NCBI GenBank assembly: GCA_038087875.1
Contig: CM075989.1
Coordinates: 23,994,001 to 24,058,000 of the forward strand
Reading direction: 5' to 3'
Origin: Malacoraja senta
Taxonomy: Eukaryota
Length of the DNA stretch: 64,000 nt
Made by a program: the position numbers and the translations under genes
Part shown: positions 22,901-60,661 of the stretch, piece after piece
Position numbering within the stretch: position 1 is the first letter of the stretch
How the letters are laid out: every line of letters begins with the position of its first letter
Notes under the pieces: generated by a model
Database searches by the model: none
What the model saw: the letters and a program-made list of their open reading frames with translations, nothing else
Told to the model about the DNA's origin: nothing

Positions 22901-25900
22901 GTGTGAAAAGGACATCTCAAACATGATATCAACAGCAGTCGACCTGCGTCATTCACATGTACACTAAGTTCCTTGGCTCCCTTCATAGTCTGGAAGTCCA
23001 CGCTACAAGCCACTTTGATCATTGGGAAGACACAACAGAGACTTGCTGGAGTCTAGGTGCCTGAACAGCCAGCAAACATGCAGGAGATGTATACAGCTGG
23101 AGTCCAGAATGGCAGCCTGCTCTCTGCCAAGATCATCAGAAGTAAAACTGAAAGGGAGACAACTCAAATAAAAAATCACTGTTGTCCTCAGACAGGAGAA
23201 GAAATGGGCCATGTTATATAAACTATTACAAAATGAAATCAGATTTCTGAATAAACTCCTTCACCTAAATCATAGTCTAAACATGAAAATGTGGCAGAAT
23301 CTATTGAATAGGATGTTTATACAACTGGTGAACAGGACATCAGGCAACGCGAATCCATCATTTGTTACTAGTTAGCGTTACTCATTATAGAACCATGTCT
23401 TCTCTCCATCATTTGTATTATGTCCACCAGTGATTGCAGCCCCGGCAGGCTTGCCAGAAATAATGTAGAATGTGTTCATACACCAGATCAGCTTCCTTCT
23501 TTAATCACTGCTGCAGTTGTTCACACCTCACCTACCTTCTCGTTCAAAGGTGAGAGTGTGACTTCCAAGCCAAGTAGTCAAGCTTGAGTAGCAAAAAGAA
23601 ATCCATGGAATGAAACCAGACTTTCACTCCGTCCCCCTCCCCCGTCACGGATCTGCTGCTGCTGTTGTTACAAAAAACTCTCAACCTTTCAGAATTTCAG
23701 ATTCAACTTGGCGCGGTTTACAGCACTGGGTGGAAGCACTCTTGCAGAAACAAGGAACTGCAGATGCTGGTTTATCAAGGAGAGATGCAAAATGCTGGAG
23801 TAACTCAGTGGGTCAGGCAGCAAAACGCTGGAGTAACTGAAGGAGTTTGAAGAAGGGTCTCGACACAAAACATCACCTATCCATATTCTACAGAGATGCT
23901 GCCCGACCCACTGAGTTACTCCAGCACTCTGTGAAACGTCACCTATCCATGTTCTCCACAGATGCTGCCTGACCCACTGACTTACTCCAGGACTCTGTGA
24001 AACATCACCTATCCATGTTCTCCAGAGATGCTGCCTGACCCGCTGAGTTACTCCAGCACTCTGTGAAACGTCACCTATCCATGTTCTCCACAGATGCTGC
24101 CTGACCCGCTGAGTTACTCCAGGACTGTGTCCTTTATTGAGCTGCTTGCTGAGTTTGCCCCTTGGTCAGGGTTGGTAGACAGGTGGTGTGACATCGGTCC
24201 CGCCGCTCCATGTGAAGTCCAACAAGAGATGGTGATCACAAGTGGTATCTGAGAATCCGCCTTTCCCCCTGCACATTGATCCAATCTTCCTACATTTCAC
24301 GAGCCATGTTTAGGTGTGCGGAGGAGAGACAGCAGCTGGCTGATGGAGAGGACAGAAGAGGTCAGGGAGGGTTGAGAAGGCTCGGTGGACCGAGGGACTG
24401 GGAGAGAGTTGGAGATGTCAGACGCCAGGAGCAAGGGCCAGTAGGAAGGTAATGTCTCCAGCGCCTTCGAGGTCAGCTGGCGGTGGTGCCCTGCGACACA
24501 AAGATGGCTGGACAATGAGATGGACGTTGGTTCATGGGAAATGCTCCTGTACATCGAGCGCGCGGGCCGACCGGACTTTGGACACGGCAGCAGTTTGGTG
24601 GCGCCGCATGTGTAGATGTGTAAAACAAACTTCACTGTGCAGTCACACATGTGATGTATAAAGCATCATTACACCATTGTGTAGGAAGGAACTGCAGATG
24701 CTAAATAACACCGAAGATAGACGTAAAATGCTGGAGTAACTCAGCGAGACAGATAGCATCTCTGGAATGGGTGACGTAGACCTGAAGCATCACCCATTCC
24801 TTCTCTCTAGAGATGCTGTCTGTCCCGCTGAGTTACTCCAGCATTTTGTCTCTGCCATCATTGACCCAATGATCCCAGCAATGGAGACCATTTGCTTACG
24901 GTGAGATTTACGAATGAAATCAGTGGAATGTGGAATTTTTAAAAATCACTAATTTATAATGGAATCAAAATACTTAGAAACCACATTTCCACCAGCCACA
25001 CTGCTGCCCTGTTGGACTGACAATGCATGATATGCAATTAGATAGAAAATTATACTCTGGCTTTTCAATCATTGCTTTAGGTTTTAATTCCCCAATGATT
25101 GGGGTGGAAACAAACAGGTACCTGATTCAAAATTGATTGTAAAACACGCCGAGAGTTGTGAATCTGTGGAATTCTCAGCCACAGAAGGCAGTGGAGGCCA
25201 ATTCACTGGATGTTTTTCAAGAGAGGGTTATATTTAGCTTAGGGCTAACGGAATCAAGTGATATGGGGAGAAAGCAGGAACGGGGTACTGATTTTAGATG
25301 ATCAGCCACGATCATATTGAATGGCGGTGCTGGCTCAAAGTGACGAATGGCCTACTCCTGCACCTATTGTCTATGTTTCTATGTAATGCGTCAGTGAGAG
25401 TTGCTTTATCCCAGTCATGGATTACTGAGTTTCCCAATCAATTAACTATACTCAACAGGCCCAATCATGTTCAATGTGTAGGAAGGAACTGCAGATGTTG
25501 ATTTAAACCAAAGATAGACACAAAATGCTGGAGTAACTCAGCGGGACAGGCAGCATCTCTGGAGAGATGGAATGGGTGACGTTTTGAGTCGAGACCCTTC
25601 TTCAGACTGAGAGTCAGGGGAGAGGGAACCAAAATATATAGACGGTATATAGAACAAATGAATGAAAGATATGCATATAGCAACGATGATCAAGGAAGGG
25701 GTGGAGCCCACAATGGTCCATTTTTGGCTGTGGGCTAGATGAAAACGAGTTATACAGACAATGAAACTCAACAGACGACAGTGAAACTAGTACAATGACA
25801 AGTGGGTGGGGGGCGGGGGGAGGGACGGAGAGAGAGGGGATGCAAGGGCTATTTGAAGTTAGAGAAGTCAATGTTCATACCGCTGGGGTGTCTGCTGCCC

Positions 25901-31411: not shown

Positions 31412-34400
31412 TCAGCGGGTCAGGCAGCATCTCTGGAGAACGTGGATAGGTGACGTTTCACAGAGTGCTGGAGTAACTCAGCGGGTCAGGCAGCATCTCT
31501 GGAGAACGTGGATAGGTGACGTTTCACAGAGTGCTGGAGTAACTCAGCGGGTCAGGCAGCATCTCTGGAGAACGTGGATAGGTGACATTTGGGGTTAGGA
31601 CCTTAGTTCAGACTGAAGTCGCATCTGAAGAAGGATCCAGGACAAATTTGGGCTGGCAACAGATGCTGTTCTTCCAATTTGTGTGTGTCCTCTCTCTGGC
31701 AATGGAGGAGGCCCAGGACAGAAAGGTCAGGGTGGGAATGGGAAGGGGAGTTAAAACCCAAGGTAACTGGGAAGTCCAGTAGGCCTTGGTGGACCATCAT
31801 CCCCATCCTCCCCCTCTCCACTTCCTCTTTCATTTCCTTTGAACTGTTCAGTGTCACGAGCCCATCAACTCCAGTCTGATTGTCCTGTCACTTACCAACG
31901 CGAGGGATAATTTACAGCAGTCAGTTATTCAGGTTATCTACCTAACATCCAGCCTGTCTTTGAGATGTGAGAAGAAACTGGAGCTCCATGGATGTCCTTG
32001 CAGAAACAGGGTGACTGTCCATGCTCCCTGTAGCTAGCATCCAAACTCAGCATCAAACTCAGGCCACAGTAGCCACACCCAATCCAAGTTGACTTATCTG
32101 ACTTTAACACTGAGAATGAATGAGATATATAAGGGGGTAAACGAACAAGGAAAACCCAACGTGTGGGAAGGAACTGCAGATGCTGGTTTACACTGAACAT
32201 AGACACAAAAAGCTGGGGTAACTCAGCGGGTCAGGCAGCATCTCTGGAGAAAAGGAATATGTGACGTTTCGGGTTCAGACCCTTCTTCAGACATTCTCGT
32301 CCCGCAAATTGGGGACCTGCCCAGAACATCGGCTTTGGCGGCGGTGCAGCGCTGGAGCGCTGTCGTGGAGCGGGCGATGCCTTTCCTGGGTCGCCGCGCT
32401 GGAACTCCAGTATGCTGGGACCGCCGATGAGAACATCGTGGAGCCGCGGTTCTGTGGAGCGGCCAGCTGCGACGCTGAACGTTACATCCCGGAGTCTGGG
32501 ATCTCTCGCTGAGATCGCCAGTGTGTGGGGCTCCGTCCGGCGCGGTCTGTTGGCTTGGAAGCCGCGGTCTCCGGTGGGAATGCGGCCGTTCCTGGCACTT
32601 CAAGCCGCTGGGGGTTCTCCCGACGCCGGAGCACCATCACCCGGCGAGAACATCGGGCGCCGTGGCGGCGACTGTGGAGGCCTCAATAGGCCCGACTCTG
32701 GGTGGACAAGAGGATGGGGACTGGACTTTGTGCCTTCCCCCACAGTGGGGGGATGTTTTTGTGTTTTGGTGTTGAACTTCTTTTTGAATGCTATGTTGTA
32801 TTTTTATTGGTGTGCTGCAAGGACATCTGAATTTCCCCTGAATAAGGGGATTAATAAAGTCTAATTCAATTCAATTCAATTCAATTCAAATGTTGGTTTG
32901 TGAGCAAACTGTCTGGTTTGTGAGTAATTTCCATCTCAAAGATTTAATTTGGTCGTAGATGAGAAGGTCATTAAGGGAAGGAAGCAATGTTTGTTACAAC
33001 TCTCTATCCTACAATATACCAACGACAAAGTCTGAAGAAGGGTCTCAATCCAAAACGTCGCTTATTCCTTTTCTCCAGAGATGCTGTCTGACCCGCTGAG
33101 TTACTCCAGCTTTTTGAGTCTATATTCAAGGAAAACCCAATCCTAACCATACTTCACCACCAGACACAAGCATGCCCCAGTAAAAACAGAAAATGCTGGA
33201 AATAATCATCAGATCAGACATCAGAACGAAGCCTAAAACAATAACTCTCTTTCCCTCTACAGAAGACGCCGTCTGACCAGCTGAAGATCTCCGACGTTTT
33301 AGTTTTAGACGTCTGGTTTAGACGTATTTTGGTTCCATATTTACATCAAGTGCAGGTCTCTGTATGGAAATGAGGAGCAAGTACTATACAGTGTTTGTGC
33401 AAAACAGCACTAATCTTCAACAAAGAATGGCAATGTACACACGGGACTGAAACCAGGATTGCCGTGGACGAAATGGACCTACTTAGGAGATTGAACAATA
33501 AACATATTTGCATTTGCGCTAATTTTTGCTCTTTGTAAGATGACACAAGTGCTTGATCTGGCCATGCTTAAAGAATGCTTTCTATTCCATTATAGACCGA
33601 GACATCATGCACGGCCAAGAATTAAGTAATGAGCAAGAATTTAAAGAAAAATTGGCCAACTCATCACTCAAGTACATTCCGTATTCCTGAAATCCACCCT
33701 ACAAATTGTGCATTTGGCAGAACATTAATCACCATTAGTTGCTTTATAAATGGGCCACGTTTCAGATGGTATTAGTTATGGACATCGTCAATGAGCACAG
33801 GGGTGGCCAGAGAACAGGTCTCATTCAACATACACACAACATGGAACAGTAAGGCACAGGAACGGGACCTTCAGCCCACAAGGTTTGTGCCGTACACCAA
33901 GTTACACAATCTGATGTGTCAGTACATGATGCATATCTCTATACTCCCTGCATTTTCACACAGCTTTCCAAAAGCCTATATTAATACATTTTAGAACATG
34001 GTCAGAAAAAAAAAATCAGCAGGTGCACTAAAGAACTAAGCCCATCCTACCAACAACTAGAACTACTATCTACCTCATTGGAGACCCTTGGACTGACAAT
34101 CTTTGATCGGACTTTTCTGGATTTTATCTGGCACTCAACGTTATTCCCTTCATACTGTATCTATACATTGTGGATGGTTTGATTGTAATCATGTATAATC
34201 TTTCCACTGAGCACACAGCAAAAGCTTTTCACTCCACCTCGGTACACGTAAAAATAAAATAAATTTAAACTCAAAACCAGGAGATAACAAAGACAAAAAT
34301 AAGAATTACAACAGGTCTGAGACAAAATTAGATTATAGAAATAGACAGTTTAAAGTATTACATTAGATGGTCAACATTAAGATGATTTATTTCTTCACCG

Positions 34401-37528: not shown

Positions 37529-38513
37529 CTGTCATGTGGGAAACAAGCAGATACAAGTCATGCATATTTCATGCTGCATGCAAGCAGAACAACTCCGCAC
37601 TCCACCGGTTGCATATTGAGACATGTAGGAAGGAACTGCAGATGCTGGTATACACTGAAAATAGACACAAAAGGCTGTTTATCCATGCTAGATCACGCCA
37701 CACACCATCTCATGTGTTGGGTTGGGCCACCATATATTTCCAAACCTTGTCTTCTTTGCTTTAAAATTATTCATAATCATCCTCAACTCACCCTCAGCAC
37801 CGACTTGAGATCAATTTTATATATTGACCACAAAAAATAAATGTTCTAGTCTTTAGTTTTAGAGATACAGCGCGGAAACAGGCCCTACAAACTAAAACTC
37901 TCAAAGAGCCAAAGATGGAACAGCATGTAATGCAGAAAGTAGAAACGAGGAACTGCAGATGTTGCTTTACAACAAAGGTTCAAAGTGCTGGAGTAACTCA
38001 GCAGGTCAGGCAGCATCTGTGGAGAACATGGATAGGTGACGTTTCAGAGTGCTGGAGTAACTCAGCGGGTCAGGCAGCATCTGTGGAGAACATGGATAGG
38101 TGATGTTTCAGGTCGGGACTGATTGTGGGTGGGGGTCGACTAAGAAAGCTGGGTGAGAGGAGGGGCAAGACAATGCAGAAAAGTAGTGACCATTAAATTT
38201 ATTCCAGTGAAGATAGATTATCAAGTGGCAAAACTTTGTTGCAGTCAAATAAACACAACATACATAACTCTTCCATCTCTCTTCCCCCCCACTCCTTCAC
38301 TGCATCTAGTCAGTAGAAGTGTCCTGACCTGGAACGTCACCTATCCATGTTCTCCAGGGATGCTGCCTGACCCACTGAGTTACTCCAGCACTCTGTGAAA
38401 CGTCACCTATCCATGTTCTCCACAGATGCTGCCTGACCCGCTGAGTTACTCCAGCACTCTGTGCTTTTCCTTGGTAAACCATCGCCTGCATTCCTCGTTT
38501 CTACAAAACATAC

Positions 38514-49546: not shown

Positions 49547-49703
49547 ATTAGCCAGCTGAGCTTGGACTTCCAGCAGTTCACTCTCCAAATGCCTCTTCTC
49601 ACCCAGTGATGTGGACAGCTGCGTCTTGTTGTAATTCAGCGCCAATTCCCGCTCTCTCAACAGCGTTAAAGCAGATTCCAACTCCGACTCCTTTTTTGCA
49701 GTT
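49547..49703 (-). CDS. lmnl3: Lamin LIII exon 2 (157 nt)
   Basis: ctttcag|A TAKKESELESALTLLRERELALNYNKTQLSTSLGEKRHLESELLEVQAQLAN|gtagg; canonical lamin exon-2 length and phase. Confidence 0.93.
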
Positions 49704-51622: not shown

Positions 51623-51843
51623 CTGAGCTGCCAGCCCACCAGGCCTGAGTGACTGAGCTGCCAGCCCACCAGGCCTGAGTGACTGAGCTGCCAGCCCACC
51701 AGGCCTGAGTGACTGAGCTGCCAGCCCACCAGGCCTGAGTGACTGAGCTGCCAGCCCACCAGGCCTGAGTGACTGAGCTGCCAGCCCACCAGGCCTGAGT
51801 GACTGAGCTGCCAGCCCACCAGGCCTGAGTGACTGAGCTGCCA
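51623..51843. repeat. 30-bp minisatellite, 7.4 perfect copies
   Basis: ctgagctgccagcccaccaggcctgagtga repeated. Confidence 0.95.
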
Positions 51844-52566
51844 CCCAAGAATCCATTCGGCCCACAATGTCCATACTAGCCCTCTGGAAACCAGTCCCTT
51901 CGGCCCACAACACCCATACTAGCGCTCCAGAATCTTTTAAAATCTTTTCCCTGTATGGAGGACCCGACCTTTCCCTGTCGGGTCCGTTGTCGTTGGGGCC
52001 TAGCACCGTGGAGAGGCCTCCAACCGGAATGACCTGGGGCTCCAGTCGCGGTGCCTGCGGACTACTCACCATCGCGGAGCTGGCCGAGTTCGGAACGTGG
52101 AGAGCTGTGGTGGCGCGCGGCTGCGACCCGACCCCGGAGATTCGGAGGCTCCAGCCGCAGGCCCGGTGGACGGTAACATCGGGAGCTCGCGGGTCCCTGG
52201 TGGGAGACCGCTTTTCGGAGCTCCCGCAACGGCAACTTCTCCCGCCCGAGTTGCGGGGTTGAAAATGACCTGGAGCGGGATCTTACATCGCCCGGCGCAG
52301 CTTTAATGGCCGCGGGACTTGCTAGCGCCCGCCGGGGGCTCCAACATCAAGACCCGGAGCGCGGCCTTGCATCGCCCGGCGCGGCTTTAATGGCCGCGGG
52401 ACTTATTTACCATCGCCCGCTGGGGGCTTTGACTCTGACAACGGGAAGAGAATGTGGAGTGCAGGGGAGAGATAAGACTTTGCCTTCCATCACAGTGAGG
52501 AGGAGATTCGCTGTGATGGATGTTTGTGTAAATTGTGTCGTGTCTTGGTTCTTCTACTTGTTTGTA

Positions 52567-56125: not shown

Positions 56126-56991
56126 TTTACTCAAAGACCAATATAGTTGTTCAGATAATTCTCTGCTGGGCAGCATCCAATAAAATATTCTACTTGATAA
56201 GGCATTCAGACGAATATTTGCTATACCATAAAGATAATTATTAGTTTCTGAAAAGGAGTTAACAAACACAACAACTTATTTTACTCTAAATCTTACCTCC
56301 ACCCTTCTGTGGAACATGATGTCTCCTGATGTCACTTAAGGGTCAACGGTCCTACCAACAACTAGAGAGCTGTCCCGAGCTTCTATCTATCTCATCGGAG
56401 ATCCTCGGAATTTCTTTGATCGGATTTTACTGGCTTTATTTTACACTAAACATTATTCACGTTATTCCCTTCATCATGTACCTGTACACTGTGGATGGCC
56501 GATTGTTATCATGGATTGTCTCTCCATTGACTGGTTAGCATGCAAGAAACGCTTTTCACTGTACCTCAGTACACTTGACAATAAACTAAACTCAAACTCA
56601 ATATAACGTTTGATTAGTTCACAAGACCATACAAGCCAAGTCCAAGTTCTCACCATCATTGATCCACGGTTAGATATCTACTCAAACATTTATTTCATGT
56701 GAAAACAAGTGGACGGGCGATAGGAGTGAGGGTGTTCACAGGAAATGGGATCATGGGGAGAATGGGAGTCGGAGGGGTGGGGACAATGGGATTGGGTGGG
56801 GGAGCTGGGATTTATGGGGTGAATAGGAAATGGGAGAAGATAAGTTGGAGAGAGGTCTTGGGGGAGGGGGGAGGAAATGTGGTTTGGGGAGATGATTTAG
56901 GGGTTGGAGGCAGGCTTGGAATGGGGAGAGACGGGATTGGGGAGGATAGGGGATGGGGAGACTGGACTGGATAGCGGTGAGACAGGTGCGG

Positions 56992-57884
56992 GGCTACATG
57001 TCCCCCAGTGTGCGCTACCTGTCCCCCAGTGTGCTCTACCTGTCCCGTTTGTGCTACCTGTCCCCCAGTGTGGGCTACCTGTCCCCCAGTGTGGGCTACC
57101 TGTCCCGTTTGCGCTACCTGTCCCGTTTGCGCTACCTGTCCCCCAGTGTGTGCTACCTGTTCCCCAGTGTGTGCTACCTGTCCCCCAGTGTGTGCTACCT
57201 GTCCCCCAGTGTGTGCTACCTGTCCCCCAGTGTGGGCTACCTGTCCCCCAGTGTGGGCTACCTGTCCCGTTTGCGCTACCTGTCCCGTTTGCGCTACCTG
57301 TCCCGTTTGCGCTACCTGTCCCCCAGTGTGTGCTACCTGTTCCCCAGTGTGTGCTACCTGTCCCCCAGTGTGTGCTACCTGTCCCCCAGTGTGTGCTACC
57401 TGTCCCCCAGTGTGCTCTACCTGTCCCCCAGTGTGCGCTACCTGTCCCCCAGTGTGCGCTACCTGTCCCCCAGTGTGCGCTACCTGTCCCCCAGTGTGCG
57501 CTACCTGTCCCCCAGTGTGCGCTACCTGTCCCCCAGTGTGCTCTACCTGTCCCCCAGTGTGCGCTACCTGTCCCCCAGTGTGCGCTACCTGTCCCCCAGT
57601 GTGCTCTACCTGTCCCCCAGTGTGCGCTACCTGTCCCCCAGTGTGCGCTACCTGTCCCCCAGTGTGCGCTACCTGTCCCCCAGTGTGCGCTACCTGTCTC
57701 CCAGTGTCTCTACCTGTCCCCCAGTGTGCTCTACCTGTCCCCCAGTGTCTCTACCTGTCTCCCAGTGTCTCTACCTGTCCCCCAGTGTGCTCTACCTGTC
57801 TCCCAGTGTCTCTACCTGTCCCCCAGTGTCTCTACCTGTCCCCCAGTGTGCGCTACCTGTCCCCCAGTGTGCGCTACCTGTCCC
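56992..57884. repeat. Minisatellite of 21-bp units (18/19-bp variants), about 43 copies, containing the exon-1 splice donor
   Basis: Unit ctacctgtcccccagtgtgcg; 43 occurrences of ctacctg counted between 57001 and 57880. Confidence 0.95.
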
Positions 57885-58305
57885 GCAGCAGGCGGTTGTC
57901 CTCCCGCACGCTGCCCAGATCCACCTGTATGCGGGCCCGCTCCGCAGCCGCGGCTTCGCGCTGTCCCCGCCAGTCCTCCAGTTGCTGCTCCAGGAGGCTG
58001 CGGGTTCCCTCCCGCTCGGCGCTGTGGGCCAGTCGCCGCCGCAACACCCGCCGCTCCGTCTCCAGCCCGCAACTCTGCCCGATGCAGGCGGCCAGGCGGT
58101 CGTTCAGCGCCCGCAACTGCTGCATCTCCTGCAGCCGGCTGATGCGGGCCGGGCTGGGGCTGATGCGGGCCGGGCTGGGGCTGATGCGGGCCGGGCTGGG
58201 GCTGATGCGGGCCGGGCTGGGGCTGATGCGGGCCGGGCTGGGGCCAGACCCGGGCTCCGGCGACCCATAGCCCCGCCAGTAAGGCGTGGAGCTCCGCCAG
58301 TCCAT
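57878..58305 (-). CDS. lmnl3: Lamin LIII exon 1 (head, coil 1A, start of coil 1B); alternative in-frame ATG at 58356
   Basis: MDWRSSTP...(PSPARIS)x5 RLQEMQQLRALNDRLAACI...ERARIQVDLG...LLRD AG|gtagcg. Contains the LNDR helix-initiation motif and a phase-2 intron as in lamin intron 1. GC/CpG-rich. Confidence 0.88.
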
Positions 58306-58400
58306 CGGCCGCAGCCGCTCTCCTCCGGCACCGGGGCTAAGTCCCGACCGCCGCATCTCCGAACAGCTCCTCGCCCCGCACTGTGTCTCTCCCGCAGCAG
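57880..58400. promoter_or_regulatory. CpG-island-like region over lamin exon 1 and 5' UTR
   Basis: Very high GC and CpG density against an AT-rich background; coincides with the first exon. Confidence 0.6.
58138..58242 (-). repeat. Coding 21-bp tandem repeat x5 (PSPARIS)
   Basis: gctgatgcgggccgggctggg at 58138, 58159, 58180, 58201 and 58222; perfect copies. Confidence 0.95.
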
Positions 58401-58509
58401 CTCCCAGTCCCGCAAAATCTCCCCCAACACCAGGACAGTTCCAGAGATACGTGCGCCTCCAAACAAAGATAACAGAGATATTCGCCTTAATTGAATCATA
58501 AAAGTCCAG

Positions 58510-60525
58510 GGAGGCTCATCAAATGAAATAAGTATAAAAATTAAAGCGAAGAAGTACAACGTAGCAAAGATGAGCGGGAAGCAAGAGGATTGGGTAATGT
58601 TTAAAGAACAACAGAAGATAACCAAAAAGACAATACGAGGAGAAAAGATGAGGTATGAAGGTAAGCTAGCCAAGAATATAAAGCAGGATAGTAAAAGCTT
58701 CTTTAAGTATGTGAAGAGGAAAAAATTAGTTAAGACCAAAGTTGGACCCTTGAAGACCGAAAAAGGTGAATTTATTATGGGGAACAAGGAAATGGCAGAT
58801 GAGTTGAACAGGTACTTTGGATCTGTCTTCACTAAGGAGGACACAAACAATCTTCCTGATATAGTAGTGGCTAGAGGATCTGGGGTGACGGAGGAACTGA
58901 AGGAAATCCACATTAGGCAGGAAATGGTGTTGGATAGACTGATGGGACTGAAGGCTGATAAATCCCCAGGGCCTGATGGTCTGCATCCCAGGGTACTTAA
59001 GGAAGTGGCTTTAGAAATTGTGGATGCAATTGGTGATAAATTTCCAATGTTCTATTGACTCAGGATCAGTTCCTGTGGATTGGAGGGTAGCTAATGTTAT
59101 CCTACTTTTTAAGAAAGGCGGGAGAGAGAAAACAGGGAATTATAGACCAGTTAGCCTGGCCTGACATGTGGGGAAGATGCTGGACTCAATTATAAAAGAT
59201 GAGATAGCCGAACATTTGGTTAGCAGTAACAGGATCAGTCCGAGTCAGCATGGATTTACGAAGGGGAAATCATGCTTGACTAATCTTCTGGAATTTTTTG
59301 AAGATGTAACTGGGAAAATGGACAAGGGAGAGCCAGTGGATGCAGTGTACCTGGACTTTCAGAAAGCATTTGATAAGGTCCCACATAGGAGATTAGTGGG
59401 CAAAATTAGGGCACATGGTATTGGGGGTAGAGTGCTGACATGGATAGAGAAGTGGTTGGCAGACAGGAAACGAAGAGTAGGGATTAACGGGTCCCTTTCA
59501 GAATGGCAGGCAGTGACTAGTGGGGTACCGCAAGGCTCGGTGCTGGGACCGCAGCTATTTACAAAATACATCAATGATTTGGATGAAGGGATTCAAAGTA
59601 ACATTTGCAAATTTGCAGATGACACAAAGCTGGGTGGCAGTGTGAACTATGAGGAGGATGCTATGAGAGTGCAGGGTGACTTGGACAGGTTGGGGGAGTG
59701 GGCAGATGCATGGTAGATGAAGTTTAATGCAGATAAATGTGAGGTTCTCCAATTTGGTAGCAAAAACAGGAAGGCAGATTACTATCTAAATGGCATCAAG
59801 TTGGGAAAAGGGGAAATACAACAGGAACAGTCTATGAAAGTAAGCATGTAGGTACAGCAGGCAGTGAAGAAAGCGAATGGCATGTTGGCCTTTATAACAA
59901 GAGGAATCTAATATAGGAGCAAAGAGGTCCTTCTGCAGTTGTACAGAGCCCTAGTGAGACCACACCTGGAGTATTGTGTACAGTTTTGGTCCCCTAATTT
60001 GAGGAAGGACATTCTTGCTTTTGAGGGAGTGCAGCGTAGGTTTGCAAGGTTAATTCACGGGATGGCGGGACTGTCATATGCTGAGAGAATGGAGCAGCTG
60101 GGCTTGTACACTCTGGAGTTTAGAAGGATGAGAGGATATCTCATTGAAACATACAAGATTGTTAAGGGTTTGGACACGCTAGAGGCAGGAAACATGTTCC
60201 TGTTGTTGGGTGAGTCCAGAACCAGGGGCCACAGTTTAAGAATAAGGAGTAAGCCATTTAGAACGGAGACGAGGAAACACTTTTTCACACAGAGAGTGGT
60301 GAGTCTGTGGAATTCTCTGCCTCCGAGGGCAGTGGAGGCGGGTTCTCTGGATGCTTTCAAGAGAGAGCTAGATAGGGCTCTTAAAAATAGCGGAGTCAGG
60401 GGATATGGGGAGAAGGCAGGAATGGGGTACTGATTGGGGATGATCAGCCATGATCACATTGAATGGCGGTGCTGGCTCGAAGGGCCGAATGGCCTACTCC
60501 TGCACCTATTGTCTATTGTCTATCG
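58510..60525 (+). mobile_element. CR1-clade LINE ORF2 fragment, 5'-truncated, frameshifted
   Basis: ORFs 58570, 59168 and 59939 carry RT motifs; 3' tail (ctattgt)n. Confidence 0.95.
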
Positions 60526-60661
60526 TCTAAACGCCGCCAGCACAGTAAACCAACATTTAAAGTACAATTTTATTTTGAGTTTGAATTTGAGCTGTGATTT
60601 TAATGCTTACATGGTGTTTTATTTCCTGCTAGTGTTACCTCAACTTTATTTGAAGCAGAGT

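What the first reader, a model, noticed from the sequence alone, without database searches (positions are those of the whole stretch)
56992..57884. The lamin exon-1 splice donor itself is amplified into a ~43-copy minisatellite
Seen: the unit on the sense strand is GGGGACAG|GTAGCGCACACTG. The first unit is the authentic, weak donor (CAG|GTAGCG), and about 42 near-identical donors follow over about 0.9 kb. Reading through the first donor hits an in-frame TAG (57874-76), so any distal donor yields a premature stop after head plus coil 1A. Most units also carry a G5 run on the pre-mRNA. Inference: this is an array of competing 5' splice sites/U1 sites plus G-quadruplex or hnRNP-F/H motifs. It could act as a copy-number-dependent NMD rheostat or a telescripting element for a germ-line lamin.
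Basis: partly seen in the sequence, partly recalled or inferred. Interest (0 to 1): 0.7.

Follow-up and report, generated by a model that had tools for sequence, protein, structure and literature searches.

The report
Splice-donor minisatellite in skate lamin LIII
The first intron of a skate's egg-type lamin gene begins with a real 21-base repeat that copies the exon-1 splice donor 43 times; it is shared with two other skates but is a kind of repeat already known from human genes, where normally only the first donor is used.

Summary
On the minus strand, a 21-bp tandem array (56993-57888, about 44 units) starts in the last 11 nt of exon 1 of a lamin-L(III)/B3-like gene. It repeats CAG|GTAG 43 times, plus one decayed CAT|GTAG.

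The first copy (exon end 57878) is the homology- and frame-correct donor, joining exon 2 at 49703. Every read-through meets the TAG at 57876-57874.

The array is not an artefact. Its words are 5-15 times deeper than exon 1 in raw-run contigs. Orthologous arrays sit at the same junction in Leucoraja erinacea (about 41 units) and Amblyraja radiata (about 18). The sawfish Pristis has a single donor.

All seven RefSeq isoforms of the two skates use the first donor.

The functional reading (NMD rheostat, telescripting, G-quadruplex) has no support:
- No RNA data could be reached.
- The G5 run is species-specific.
- No canonical G4 motif exists.

Published cases (F7, IFI6, CBS, PDGF and human lamin B2) show the first donor, or the first two or three, being used.

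My best reading is a slippage-born, concertedly evolving intronic VNTR whose extra donors are mostly silent.

The scan's notes list similar donor arrays in other genes of this same genome. I did not check those notes.

The parts
56993..57888 (-). 21-bp minisatellite, about 44 units. It begins in the last 11 nt of exon 1, and each unit carries CAG|GTAG. Unit order by type is AABCDCBDC AAAADAADAAAAAD EEFEGGGHH EEFEGGHH IDJ.
57878..58356 (-). Coding part of exon 1 of a lamin-L(III)/B3-like gene. ATG is at 58356-58354. It encodes the head, coil 1A, the linker and the start of coil 1B, and ends in phase 2 (AG|A = Arg).
   Evidence: lamin A/C 6jlb, E 1e-12; 83% identity to L. erinacea XP_055516981 from residue 1
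57876..57877 (-). GT of the first (working) donor, CAG|GTAGCG.
   Evidence: The junction LRDR|TA.K matches the annotated orthologues.
57874..57876 (-). TAG in the exon-1 reading frame. It is read if the first donor is skipped, so every distal donor gives a premature stop.
   Evidence: frame 0 reads R* at once
49547..49703 (-). Exon 2, 157 nt, after the acceptor ttctttcag. I recall from memory that human LMNA exon 2 is the same length; not checked here.
57058..57399 (-). Two higher-order blocks of units (EEFEGGGHH, then EEFEGGHH). This is the mark of unequal exchange inside the array.
56974..57000 (-). Decayed last unit (CAT|GTAG) fused to the remnant of the ancestral intron start (GCCCCGCACCTG...). 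In A. radiata and L. erinacea this end still reads CAG|GTACCGC(A/G)GCCG, matching the single Pristis donor.
   Evidence: alignment A2

Best explanation
This is a donor-reiterating intronic minisatellite (VNTR). A short segment spanning the exon-1/intron-1 junction of the lamin LIII gene was duplicated in an ancestor of skates, probably by slippage between the CTG at exon position -11 and a CTG about 25 nt into the intron. It then lost about 12 nt and expanded by slippage and unequal exchange. It has since evolved in concert, giving 18-44 copies and species-specific unit variants.

The ancestral intron start now lies at the far end of the array. The splicing machinery uses the most upstream copy, which is the first transcribed, is cap-proximal and is flanked by the exon. 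The downstream copies are pseudo-sites that are silent, or at most leak at the second or third copy. Leaked transcripts carry the TAG and would be NMD targets.

Shown here: the array, its position, its conservation and turnover, the stop codon, and annotation at the first donor in the orthologues. Inferred: the mode of origin, the silence of the distal donors, and the absence of an adaptive role.
For: - The array and the junction are shown.
- The exon 1/2 junction and phase fit lamin homology.
- The same 21-bp array sits at the same junction, bounded by orthologous flanks, in L. erinacea (L001 3511-4373, 40.7 copies) and A. radiata (L002 3427-3797, 17.7 copies). Pristis pectinata has one donor and no array.
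- The distal end of the array keeps the Pristis-like GTACCGCGGCCG.
- Array identity between species is 84-88%, against 90-94% for unique intron 1, and each species has its own unit variants. Higher-order blocks are present. These are the signs of concerted turnover.
- All 7 RefSeq isoforms of the two skates join at the first donor (ends at L001:3521 and L002:3437).
- Precedents are reviewed in PMC1557585. F7 (37 bp x5-9), lamin B2 (100 bp x10-15) and PDGF (81 bp) use only the first donor. IFI 6-16 (25 pseudo-sites) and CBS (31 bp x15-20) also use the next two.
- Scan notes list further donor arrays in other genes of this genome (unchecked). That fits a mutational rather than a gene-specific origin.
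Against: - No RNA evidence for this species or its relatives could be reached, so the use of distal donors is unmeasured.
- The distal donors equal the first in the 9-mer and in predicted U1 pairing. The 21-nt spacing is nearer to the leaky human cases (IFI 6-16; CBS, 31 bp) than to the silent ones (37-100 bp).
- The array has survived in three genera with an unvaried CAG|GTAG core among the 21-nt units (0 of 13 variant types). This could reflect constraint.
- Gene annotation pipelines rarely report NMD isoforms, so their silence is weak evidence.
Confidence: 0.65

Rival explanations
1. The 43 donors compete for U1 and for the acceptor at 49703. Distal choices give PTC-bearing mRNA, so array length sets the productive output of the oocyte lamin (an NMD rheostat), or the U1 sites protect the long intron from premature polyadenylation (telescripting).
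For: The donors are identical in the 9-mer and in predicted U1 pairing. An in-frame TAG follows directly after the first donor. The array is retained in three skate genera. The short 21-nt period resembles the leaky IFI 6-16 and CBS cases.
Against: - No junction reads are available.
- All annotated isoforms use donor 1.
- F7 minigene work shows that identical downstream sites do not compete, even when strengthened to a consensus value of 91.
- Copy number differs 2.5-fold between species without any visible compensating change.
- Intron 1 has 8 AATAAA/ATTAAA against about 6 expected, the first 300 nt beyond the array, so there is no special need for telescripting.
Confidence: 0.12
2. The array is kept as an intronic enhancer. 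A dense row of G-runs (hnRNP F/H sites) and U1 sites just downstream of a mediocre, promoter-proximal first donor raises use of that donor or raises transcription.
For: A G-run starts 14 nt after every donor, and GGG is kept in all three skates. The donor lacks consensus at +4 to +6. From general knowledge, not tested here: G triplets near 5' splice sites and promoter-proximal 5' splice sites can enhance splicing and transcription.
Against: The G5 run is specific to the window species. There is no canonical G4. The same G-run would help each pseudo-donor equally. Pristis manages with one donor of weaker predicted U1 pairing (-5.7). Similar arrays in unrelated genes of this genome point to mutation, not design.
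Confidence: 0.12
3. Assembly artefact: the array is an over-expanded or mis-joined repeat.
For: Short-read unitigs break at the array (table 8), and no spanning long read was seen.
Against: Contig word depth in the array bin is about 15 times the exon-1 depth in a run of the same species, and 5-8 times in two relatives (table 2). Two independent assemblies of other skates carry 18 and 41 units at the same junction. Exact copy number stays unverified.
Confidence: 0.02

Closest known systems
Human F7 intron 7 37-bp VNTR (Borensztajn et al. 2006, PMC1557585)
   Same: The first monomer spans the exon-intron boundary, so the authentic donor is followed by identical pseudo-donors. The array is intronic and varies in copy number.
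   Different: F7 has 5-9 copies of 37 bp after an internal exon. Here there are about 44 copies of 21 bp after the first exon. Use of only the first donor is shown by minigenes for F7 and is untested here.
Human interferon-inducible 6-16 (IFI6) intron 2 minisatellite (Turri et al. 1995, as cited in PMC1557585)
   Same: Many reiterated donors (25 pseudo-sites) with a short unit.
   Different: In 6-16 the two nearest pseudo-sites are used constitutively. Here any extra unit brings a TAG, so leakage would give NMD substrates rather than protein variants. The original paper was not held.
Human CBS intron 13 31-bp VNTR (Yang 2000 and Lievers 2001, as cited in PMC1557585)
   Same: The VNTR lies on the exon/intron border, with 15-20 donors and copy-number variation.
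   Different: For CBS, two pseudo-sites are used and allele length was associated with enzyme activity. No such data exist here.
Human lamin B2 intron repeat (de Stanchina et al. 1997, as cited in PMC1557585)
   Same: It also lies in a lamin gene: a repeat that reiterates the exon/intron junction, with only the authentic donor used.
   Different: The unit is 100 bp in 10-15 copies and covers most of an intron. It is in a different lamin paralogue, so the origin is presumably independent; which intron it occupies was not checked here.

Membership tests
Donor-reiterating minisatellite (F7 / IFI6 / CBS / LMNB2 / PDGF type) | Head-to-tail array of units of about 10-100 bp | tested here: met
   Period 21, 43.8 copies, 93% matches.
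Donor-reiterating minisatellite (F7 / IFI6 / CBS / LMNB2 / PDGF type) | The first monomer spans the exon-intron boundary, so the authentic 5' splice site is repeated in the intron on the sense strand | tested here: met
   The array starts at 57888 and the exon ends at 57878. The boundary is fixed by lamin homology, by phase and by orthologue annotation.
Donor-reiterating minisatellite (F7 / IFI6 / CBS / LMNB2 / PDGF type) | Variable copy number | tested here: met
   Between species there are about 44, 41 and 18 units. Variation within a species was not tested.
Donor-reiterating minisatellite (F7 / IFI6 / CBS / LMNB2 / PDGF type) | Only the most upstream donor (or the first two or three) is used | not testable with these tools
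   No RNA run holds the locus. The 7 RefSeq isoforms in two skates use donor 1, which is consistent.
Lamin L(III)/B3 gene | IF rod plus lamin tail, in the lamin exon pattern, with closest relatives named lamin-L(III)/B3 | tested here: met
   Exon 1 matches lamin A/C. Nine exon matches to lamin-L(III)-like proteins (PF00038 + PF00932) run from 58356 to about 26670. The joined protein was not built; exons were searched by reference only.
G-quadruplex-forming array | Four G-runs of 3 or more with loops of 1-7 nt | tested here: not met
   No canonical motifs were found; loops are 13-16 nt. The G5 run is G3 in the other skates.
Unproductive-splicing (NMD) regulatory element | Measurable use of the PTC-introducing splice sites, responsive to NMD | not testable with these tools
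   Only the sequence potential (the TAG at 57876-57874) is shown.

The most novel reading that the evidence does not exclude
Skate genomes may be unusually prone to seeding minisatellites at 5' splice sites; the scan has flagged several genes in this one genome. In lamin LIII the array may have been retained across at least three genera, with an unvaried CAG|GTAG core, because a row of U1 sites with in-frame stops tunes the output of the oocyte lamin through unproductive splicing.
Probability: 0.1. Interest if true: 0.6.

Novelty: new member of a known kind. Interest (0 to 1): 0.3.

Why it matters
With 43 identical donors at 21-nt spacing after a first exon, and natural alleles of 18, 41 and 44 units in three species, this is one of the largest natural test cases for how a 5' splice site is chosen among equals. 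Candidate rules include order of transcription, cap proximity and steric exclusion of U1.

It also shows that the working donor can be a derived copy, while the ancestral intron start is pushed 0.4-0.9 kb downstream.

It does not by itself reveal a new mechanism. The same kind of repeat is documented in human F7, IFI6, CBS, PDGF and lamin B2.

Tried and rejected
I then laid the part with 9 units plus exon 1, as the tool advised. All four runs behaved as DNA unitigs, so no splice junctions were obtained.
- The look-up of sequencing runs found no RNA holder.
- The word search with the exon-1 peptide gave only distant lamins, at most 45% identical. The full-library search gave at most 50% identity over the lamin rod but supplied the shark LIII protein P0038. 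That protein led to the skate orthologues.
- Exact look-ups of isoform X2 proteins failed; the X1 isoforms worked.
- Look-ups of the read-through ORFs (exon 1 plus Arg, then stop) of the window and of L. erinacea found nothing.
- The Chiloscyllium locus has an assembly gap 16 nt after its donor. I left it unfilled, so it is uninformative.
- A per-position variation test put 0 of 13 variant types in the core, naive p = 0.005. I reject it as evidence of constraint for four reasons. ACACTG is equally invariant. The +5/+6 CpG is a mutational hotspot. Edge units with core changes were excluded. Variants are not independent events.
- RNA folding gave z = -5.1, but the first and later donors are paired alike, so it explains nothing.
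- The Turri 1995 paper was not held.
- MaxEntScan tables are not available. U1 duplex energies were used instead, with the 11-nt U1 5' end typed from general knowledge.

Full report
**1. The observation**

On the minus strand the window reads ...CTGCTGCGGGACAG|GTAGCGCACACTGGGGGACAG|GTAGCG....
- Tandem Repeats Finder reports one array at 56993-57888, period 21, 43.8 copies, 93% matches, score 1372.
- Splitting at GTAG gives 43 CAG|GTAG sites and a final CAT|GTAG. By type they are 19 GTAGCG, 11 GTAGAG, 9 GTAGCA and 4 GTAGCC. Units are 21 nt (32), 20 nt (5) and 18 nt (6) long.
- The 12-mer core occurs 53 times in the window against 0.16 expected. The ten hits outside the array are a different word (GGGACAGGCAGC and one other) belonging to dispersed repeats.
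- Unit types run AABCDCBDC AAAADAADAAAAAD EEFEGGGHH EEFEGGHH IDJ. This includes a higher-order duplication of about 170 bp, the footprint of unequal exchange.

**2. The gene and the authentic donor**

Gene identity:
- The open frame upstream (ATG at 58356, end at 57878) encodes a lamin head, coil 1A and the start of coil 1B. It aligns to human lamin A/C residues 8-120 (6jlb, E 1e-12), ending at ...VREEFKEL.
- The best full-length relative found through the library search is lamin-L(III)-like of Carcharodon (P0038).
- The closest relatives are lamin-L(III)-like of Leucoraja erinacea and Amblyraja radiata, 83-92% identical per exon. The window therefore comes from a third skate.
- Nine exon matches run from 58356 down to about 26670.
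All searches were exon by exon or with database proteins.

The junction:
- Exon 1 ends in phase 2 (GAC AG|).
- Exon 2 begins at 49703 behind ttctttcag and is 157 nt long. The split codon AG|A gives ...LLRD-R-TAKKESE....
- I recall from memory that human LMNA exon 1 ends in the same phase at the same place and that its exon 2 is the same length. This was not checked here.
- The first unit's donor is therefore the correct one.
- If it is skipped, the frame reads AGG TAG (57876-57874). Every distal donor yields a premature stop.

**3. Is the array real DNA?**

- No RNA run holds the locus.
Laying 57690-60600 showed that all four runs are DNA-like unitigs.
- Two runs of the same species match exon 1 without differences. 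Their word depth in the array bin is about 15 times that of exon 1 (53.6 against 3.2-3.8 in X2).
- Two relatives, about 93% identical in exon 1, show ratios of 5-8.
- Unitigs stop one unit into the array, as expected for a 21-bp repeat with 31-mers.
- Together with the two independent assemblies below, this excludes an artefact. The exact copy number remains unverified.

**4. Relatives**

| Species (locus) | Array at the exon-1 donor | Unit or donor |
|---|---|---|
| Window species | 56993-57888, about 44 units | CTGGGGGACAG\|GTAGCGCACA |
| L. erinacea (L001) | 3511-4373, 40.7 copies | CTGTGGGACAG\|GTAGCACACA |
| A. radiata (L002) | 3427-3797, 17.7 copies | CTGCGGGACAG\|GTAGCA(C/T)ACA |
| Pristis pectinata (L003) | none; single donor | GAG\|GTACCGCGGCCG |

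- In both other skates the 21-bp array also starts in the last 11 nt of exon 1.
- The arrays lie between orthologous flanks. Unique intron-1 DNA is 90-94% identical between the skates, while the arrays are only 84-88% identical and each species has its own unit variants. This is concerted evolution.
- At the far end of the A. radiata and L. erinacea arrays, the last donor reads CAG|GTACCGC(A/G)GCCG..., followed in A. radiata by GCCCCGCACCTG (alignment A2). The ancestral intron start has therefore been pushed to the distal end, and the working donor is a derived copy.
- In the window species about 12 nt of that end are lost, and the last site is CAT|GTAG.
- The unit can be read as exon -11 to intron +3 joined to the GCCCCGCAC-CTG segment. 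This suggests slippage between two CTGs, followed by a 12-nt deletion and expansion. That origin is an inference.
- A shark locus (Chiloscyllium, L004) has an assembly gap 16 nt after its donor, so it is uninformative. I did not fill it.

**5. Which donors are used?**

Only indirect evidence is available.
- All five RefSeq isoforms of L. erinacea and both of A. radiata share the junction LRDR|TAAK. This is the first donor, at L001:3521 and L002:3437. They differ only in later exons and in the C-terminus.
- Annotation seldom lists NMD isoforms, so this is consistent with the reading, not decisive.
- Predicted pairing to the U1 5' end is -7.7 kcal/mol for the unit donor and is the same for every GTAGC copy. 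The gene's other eight donors range from -4.0 to -11.3, and the single Pristis donor gives -5.7. The donor lacks consensus at +4 to +6 but is not unusually weak for this gene.

**6. The functional ideas**

- G-quadruplex: there is no canonical motif, since loops are 13-16 nt. The G5 run is G3 in the other skates.
- Telescripting: intron 1 (8174 nt) has 8 poly(A) hexamers against about 6 expected, the first 300 nt beyond the array. This is unremarkable.
- RNA structure: the start of the array folds better than shuffles (z = -5.1), but the first and later donors are treated alike.
- Constraint: among 21-nt units of the three species, none of 13 variant types falls in CAG|GTAG. I treat this as inconclusive. 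ACACTG is just as invariant, the variable +5/+6 is a CpG, edge units with core changes were excluded, and variants are not independent events.

**7. What is known**

Borensztajn et al. [quoted passage not shown]

| Human gene | Array | Donors used |
|---|---|---|
| F7 intron 7 | 37 bp x5-9 | first only |
| Lamin B2 | 100 bp x10-15 | authentic only |
| PDGF intron 4 | 81 bp x16-18 | first only |
| IFI 6-16 | 25 pseudo-sites | first, plus the next two |
| CBS intron 13 | 31 bp x15-20 | first, plus the next two |

[quoted passage not shown] They propose a 5'-to-3' scan.
- The skate array is a new and large member of this kind. It has 43 donors, a short 21-nt period and a first-exon position, where cap-proximal U1 recruitment may add to the bias (general knowledge).
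- Because the documented leaky cases include a short-period array (CBS, 31 bp), some use of donors 2-3 is plausible here. It would give TAG-bearing NMD substrates rather than protein variants.

**8. Context from the scan**

- Notes on this same genome list donor-seeded arrays in ZBTB16, FUT11, GNPTG, SRCIN1 and an NKp30-like gene. These are unchecked AI notes.
- If they hold, the phenomenon is recurrent in this genome. That favours a mutational origin over a lamin-specific device, and it raises a separate question: why skates seed repeats at donors.
- The neighbouring note on the coding 21-bp head repeat agrees with my alignment: 5 copies here, 7 in L. erinacea and 3 in A. radiata.

**9. Verdict**

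The regulatory part is unsupported and runs against the experimental precedents.
- Best reading (about 0.65): a slippage-born, concertedly evolving intronic VNTR whose extra donors are mostly silent.
- Novelty: a new member of a known kind.
- Interest is modest. It would be a good natural model for 5' splice-site choice, and it is worth a junction-read test in ovary RNA.

Noticed in passing
window 58137-58244 (-): A perfect 21-bp coding repeat in the lamin head gives five SPSPARI copies of the CDK1-type SP.R site just before coil 1A. L. erinacea has 7 copies and A. radiata has 3 (alignment A1). It has the same period as the donor array, but the sequence is unrelated. The scan already reported it (s1-140426).
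   Followed up: partly
window 51623-51847; L002 8874-8949: A second minisatellite lies in intron 1: 30 bp, 7.5 copies at 99% identity. The same unit is present in A. radiata with only 2.5 copies, so it is another orthologous VNTR.
   Followed up: partly
window 58474-60531: A very high-copy dispersed repeat starts about 120 bp upstream of the lamin ATG. Contig word depth is 10^5-10^7 in all four runs laid, with hundreds of variant joints. The upstream region to about 58870-59000 is nevertheless alignable to both other skates.
   Followed up: no
window 57990-58140 (-): Coil 1A departs from the intermediate-filament consensus. It reads LNDRLAACIGQSCGLE where lamins have LNDRLAVYIDRVRSLE. The same change is present in all three skates, and exon 1 is only 44-57% identical to shark and ray LIII. 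This points to a fast-evolving N-terminus in skate LIII.
   Followed up: partly
window 1163-1508 and 6945-7290: Identical repeat hits spaced 5782 bp apart (TRF rows at 1462 and 7244; 12-mer hits at 1163/6945 and 1292/7074) suggest a tandem segmental duplication of about 5.8 kb near the start of the window.
   Followed up: no
window 11517-11710, 23868-24130, 31412-31590, 37979-38111, 38333-38463: A 66-bp unit (…CTGAGTTACTCCAGCA…) recurs as short tandem arrays of 2-4 copies on both strands. It is probably the tail of a SINE-like element common in this genome.
   Followed up: no
L001 and L002 proteins (alignment A1, columns 590-638): The annotated skate LIII isoforms end either in the CaaX box CTIM or in short alternative tails without it. 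Some skip a rod exon or Ig-fold exons.
   Followed up: no
same genome, other pieces (scan notes s1-197975, s1-191407, s1-187610, s1-206945, s1-197993, s1-140429): Several other genes of this skate genome are noted as having minisatellites grown from their own splice donors. A genome-wide census against other vertebrates would show whether skates are enriched.
   Followed up: no
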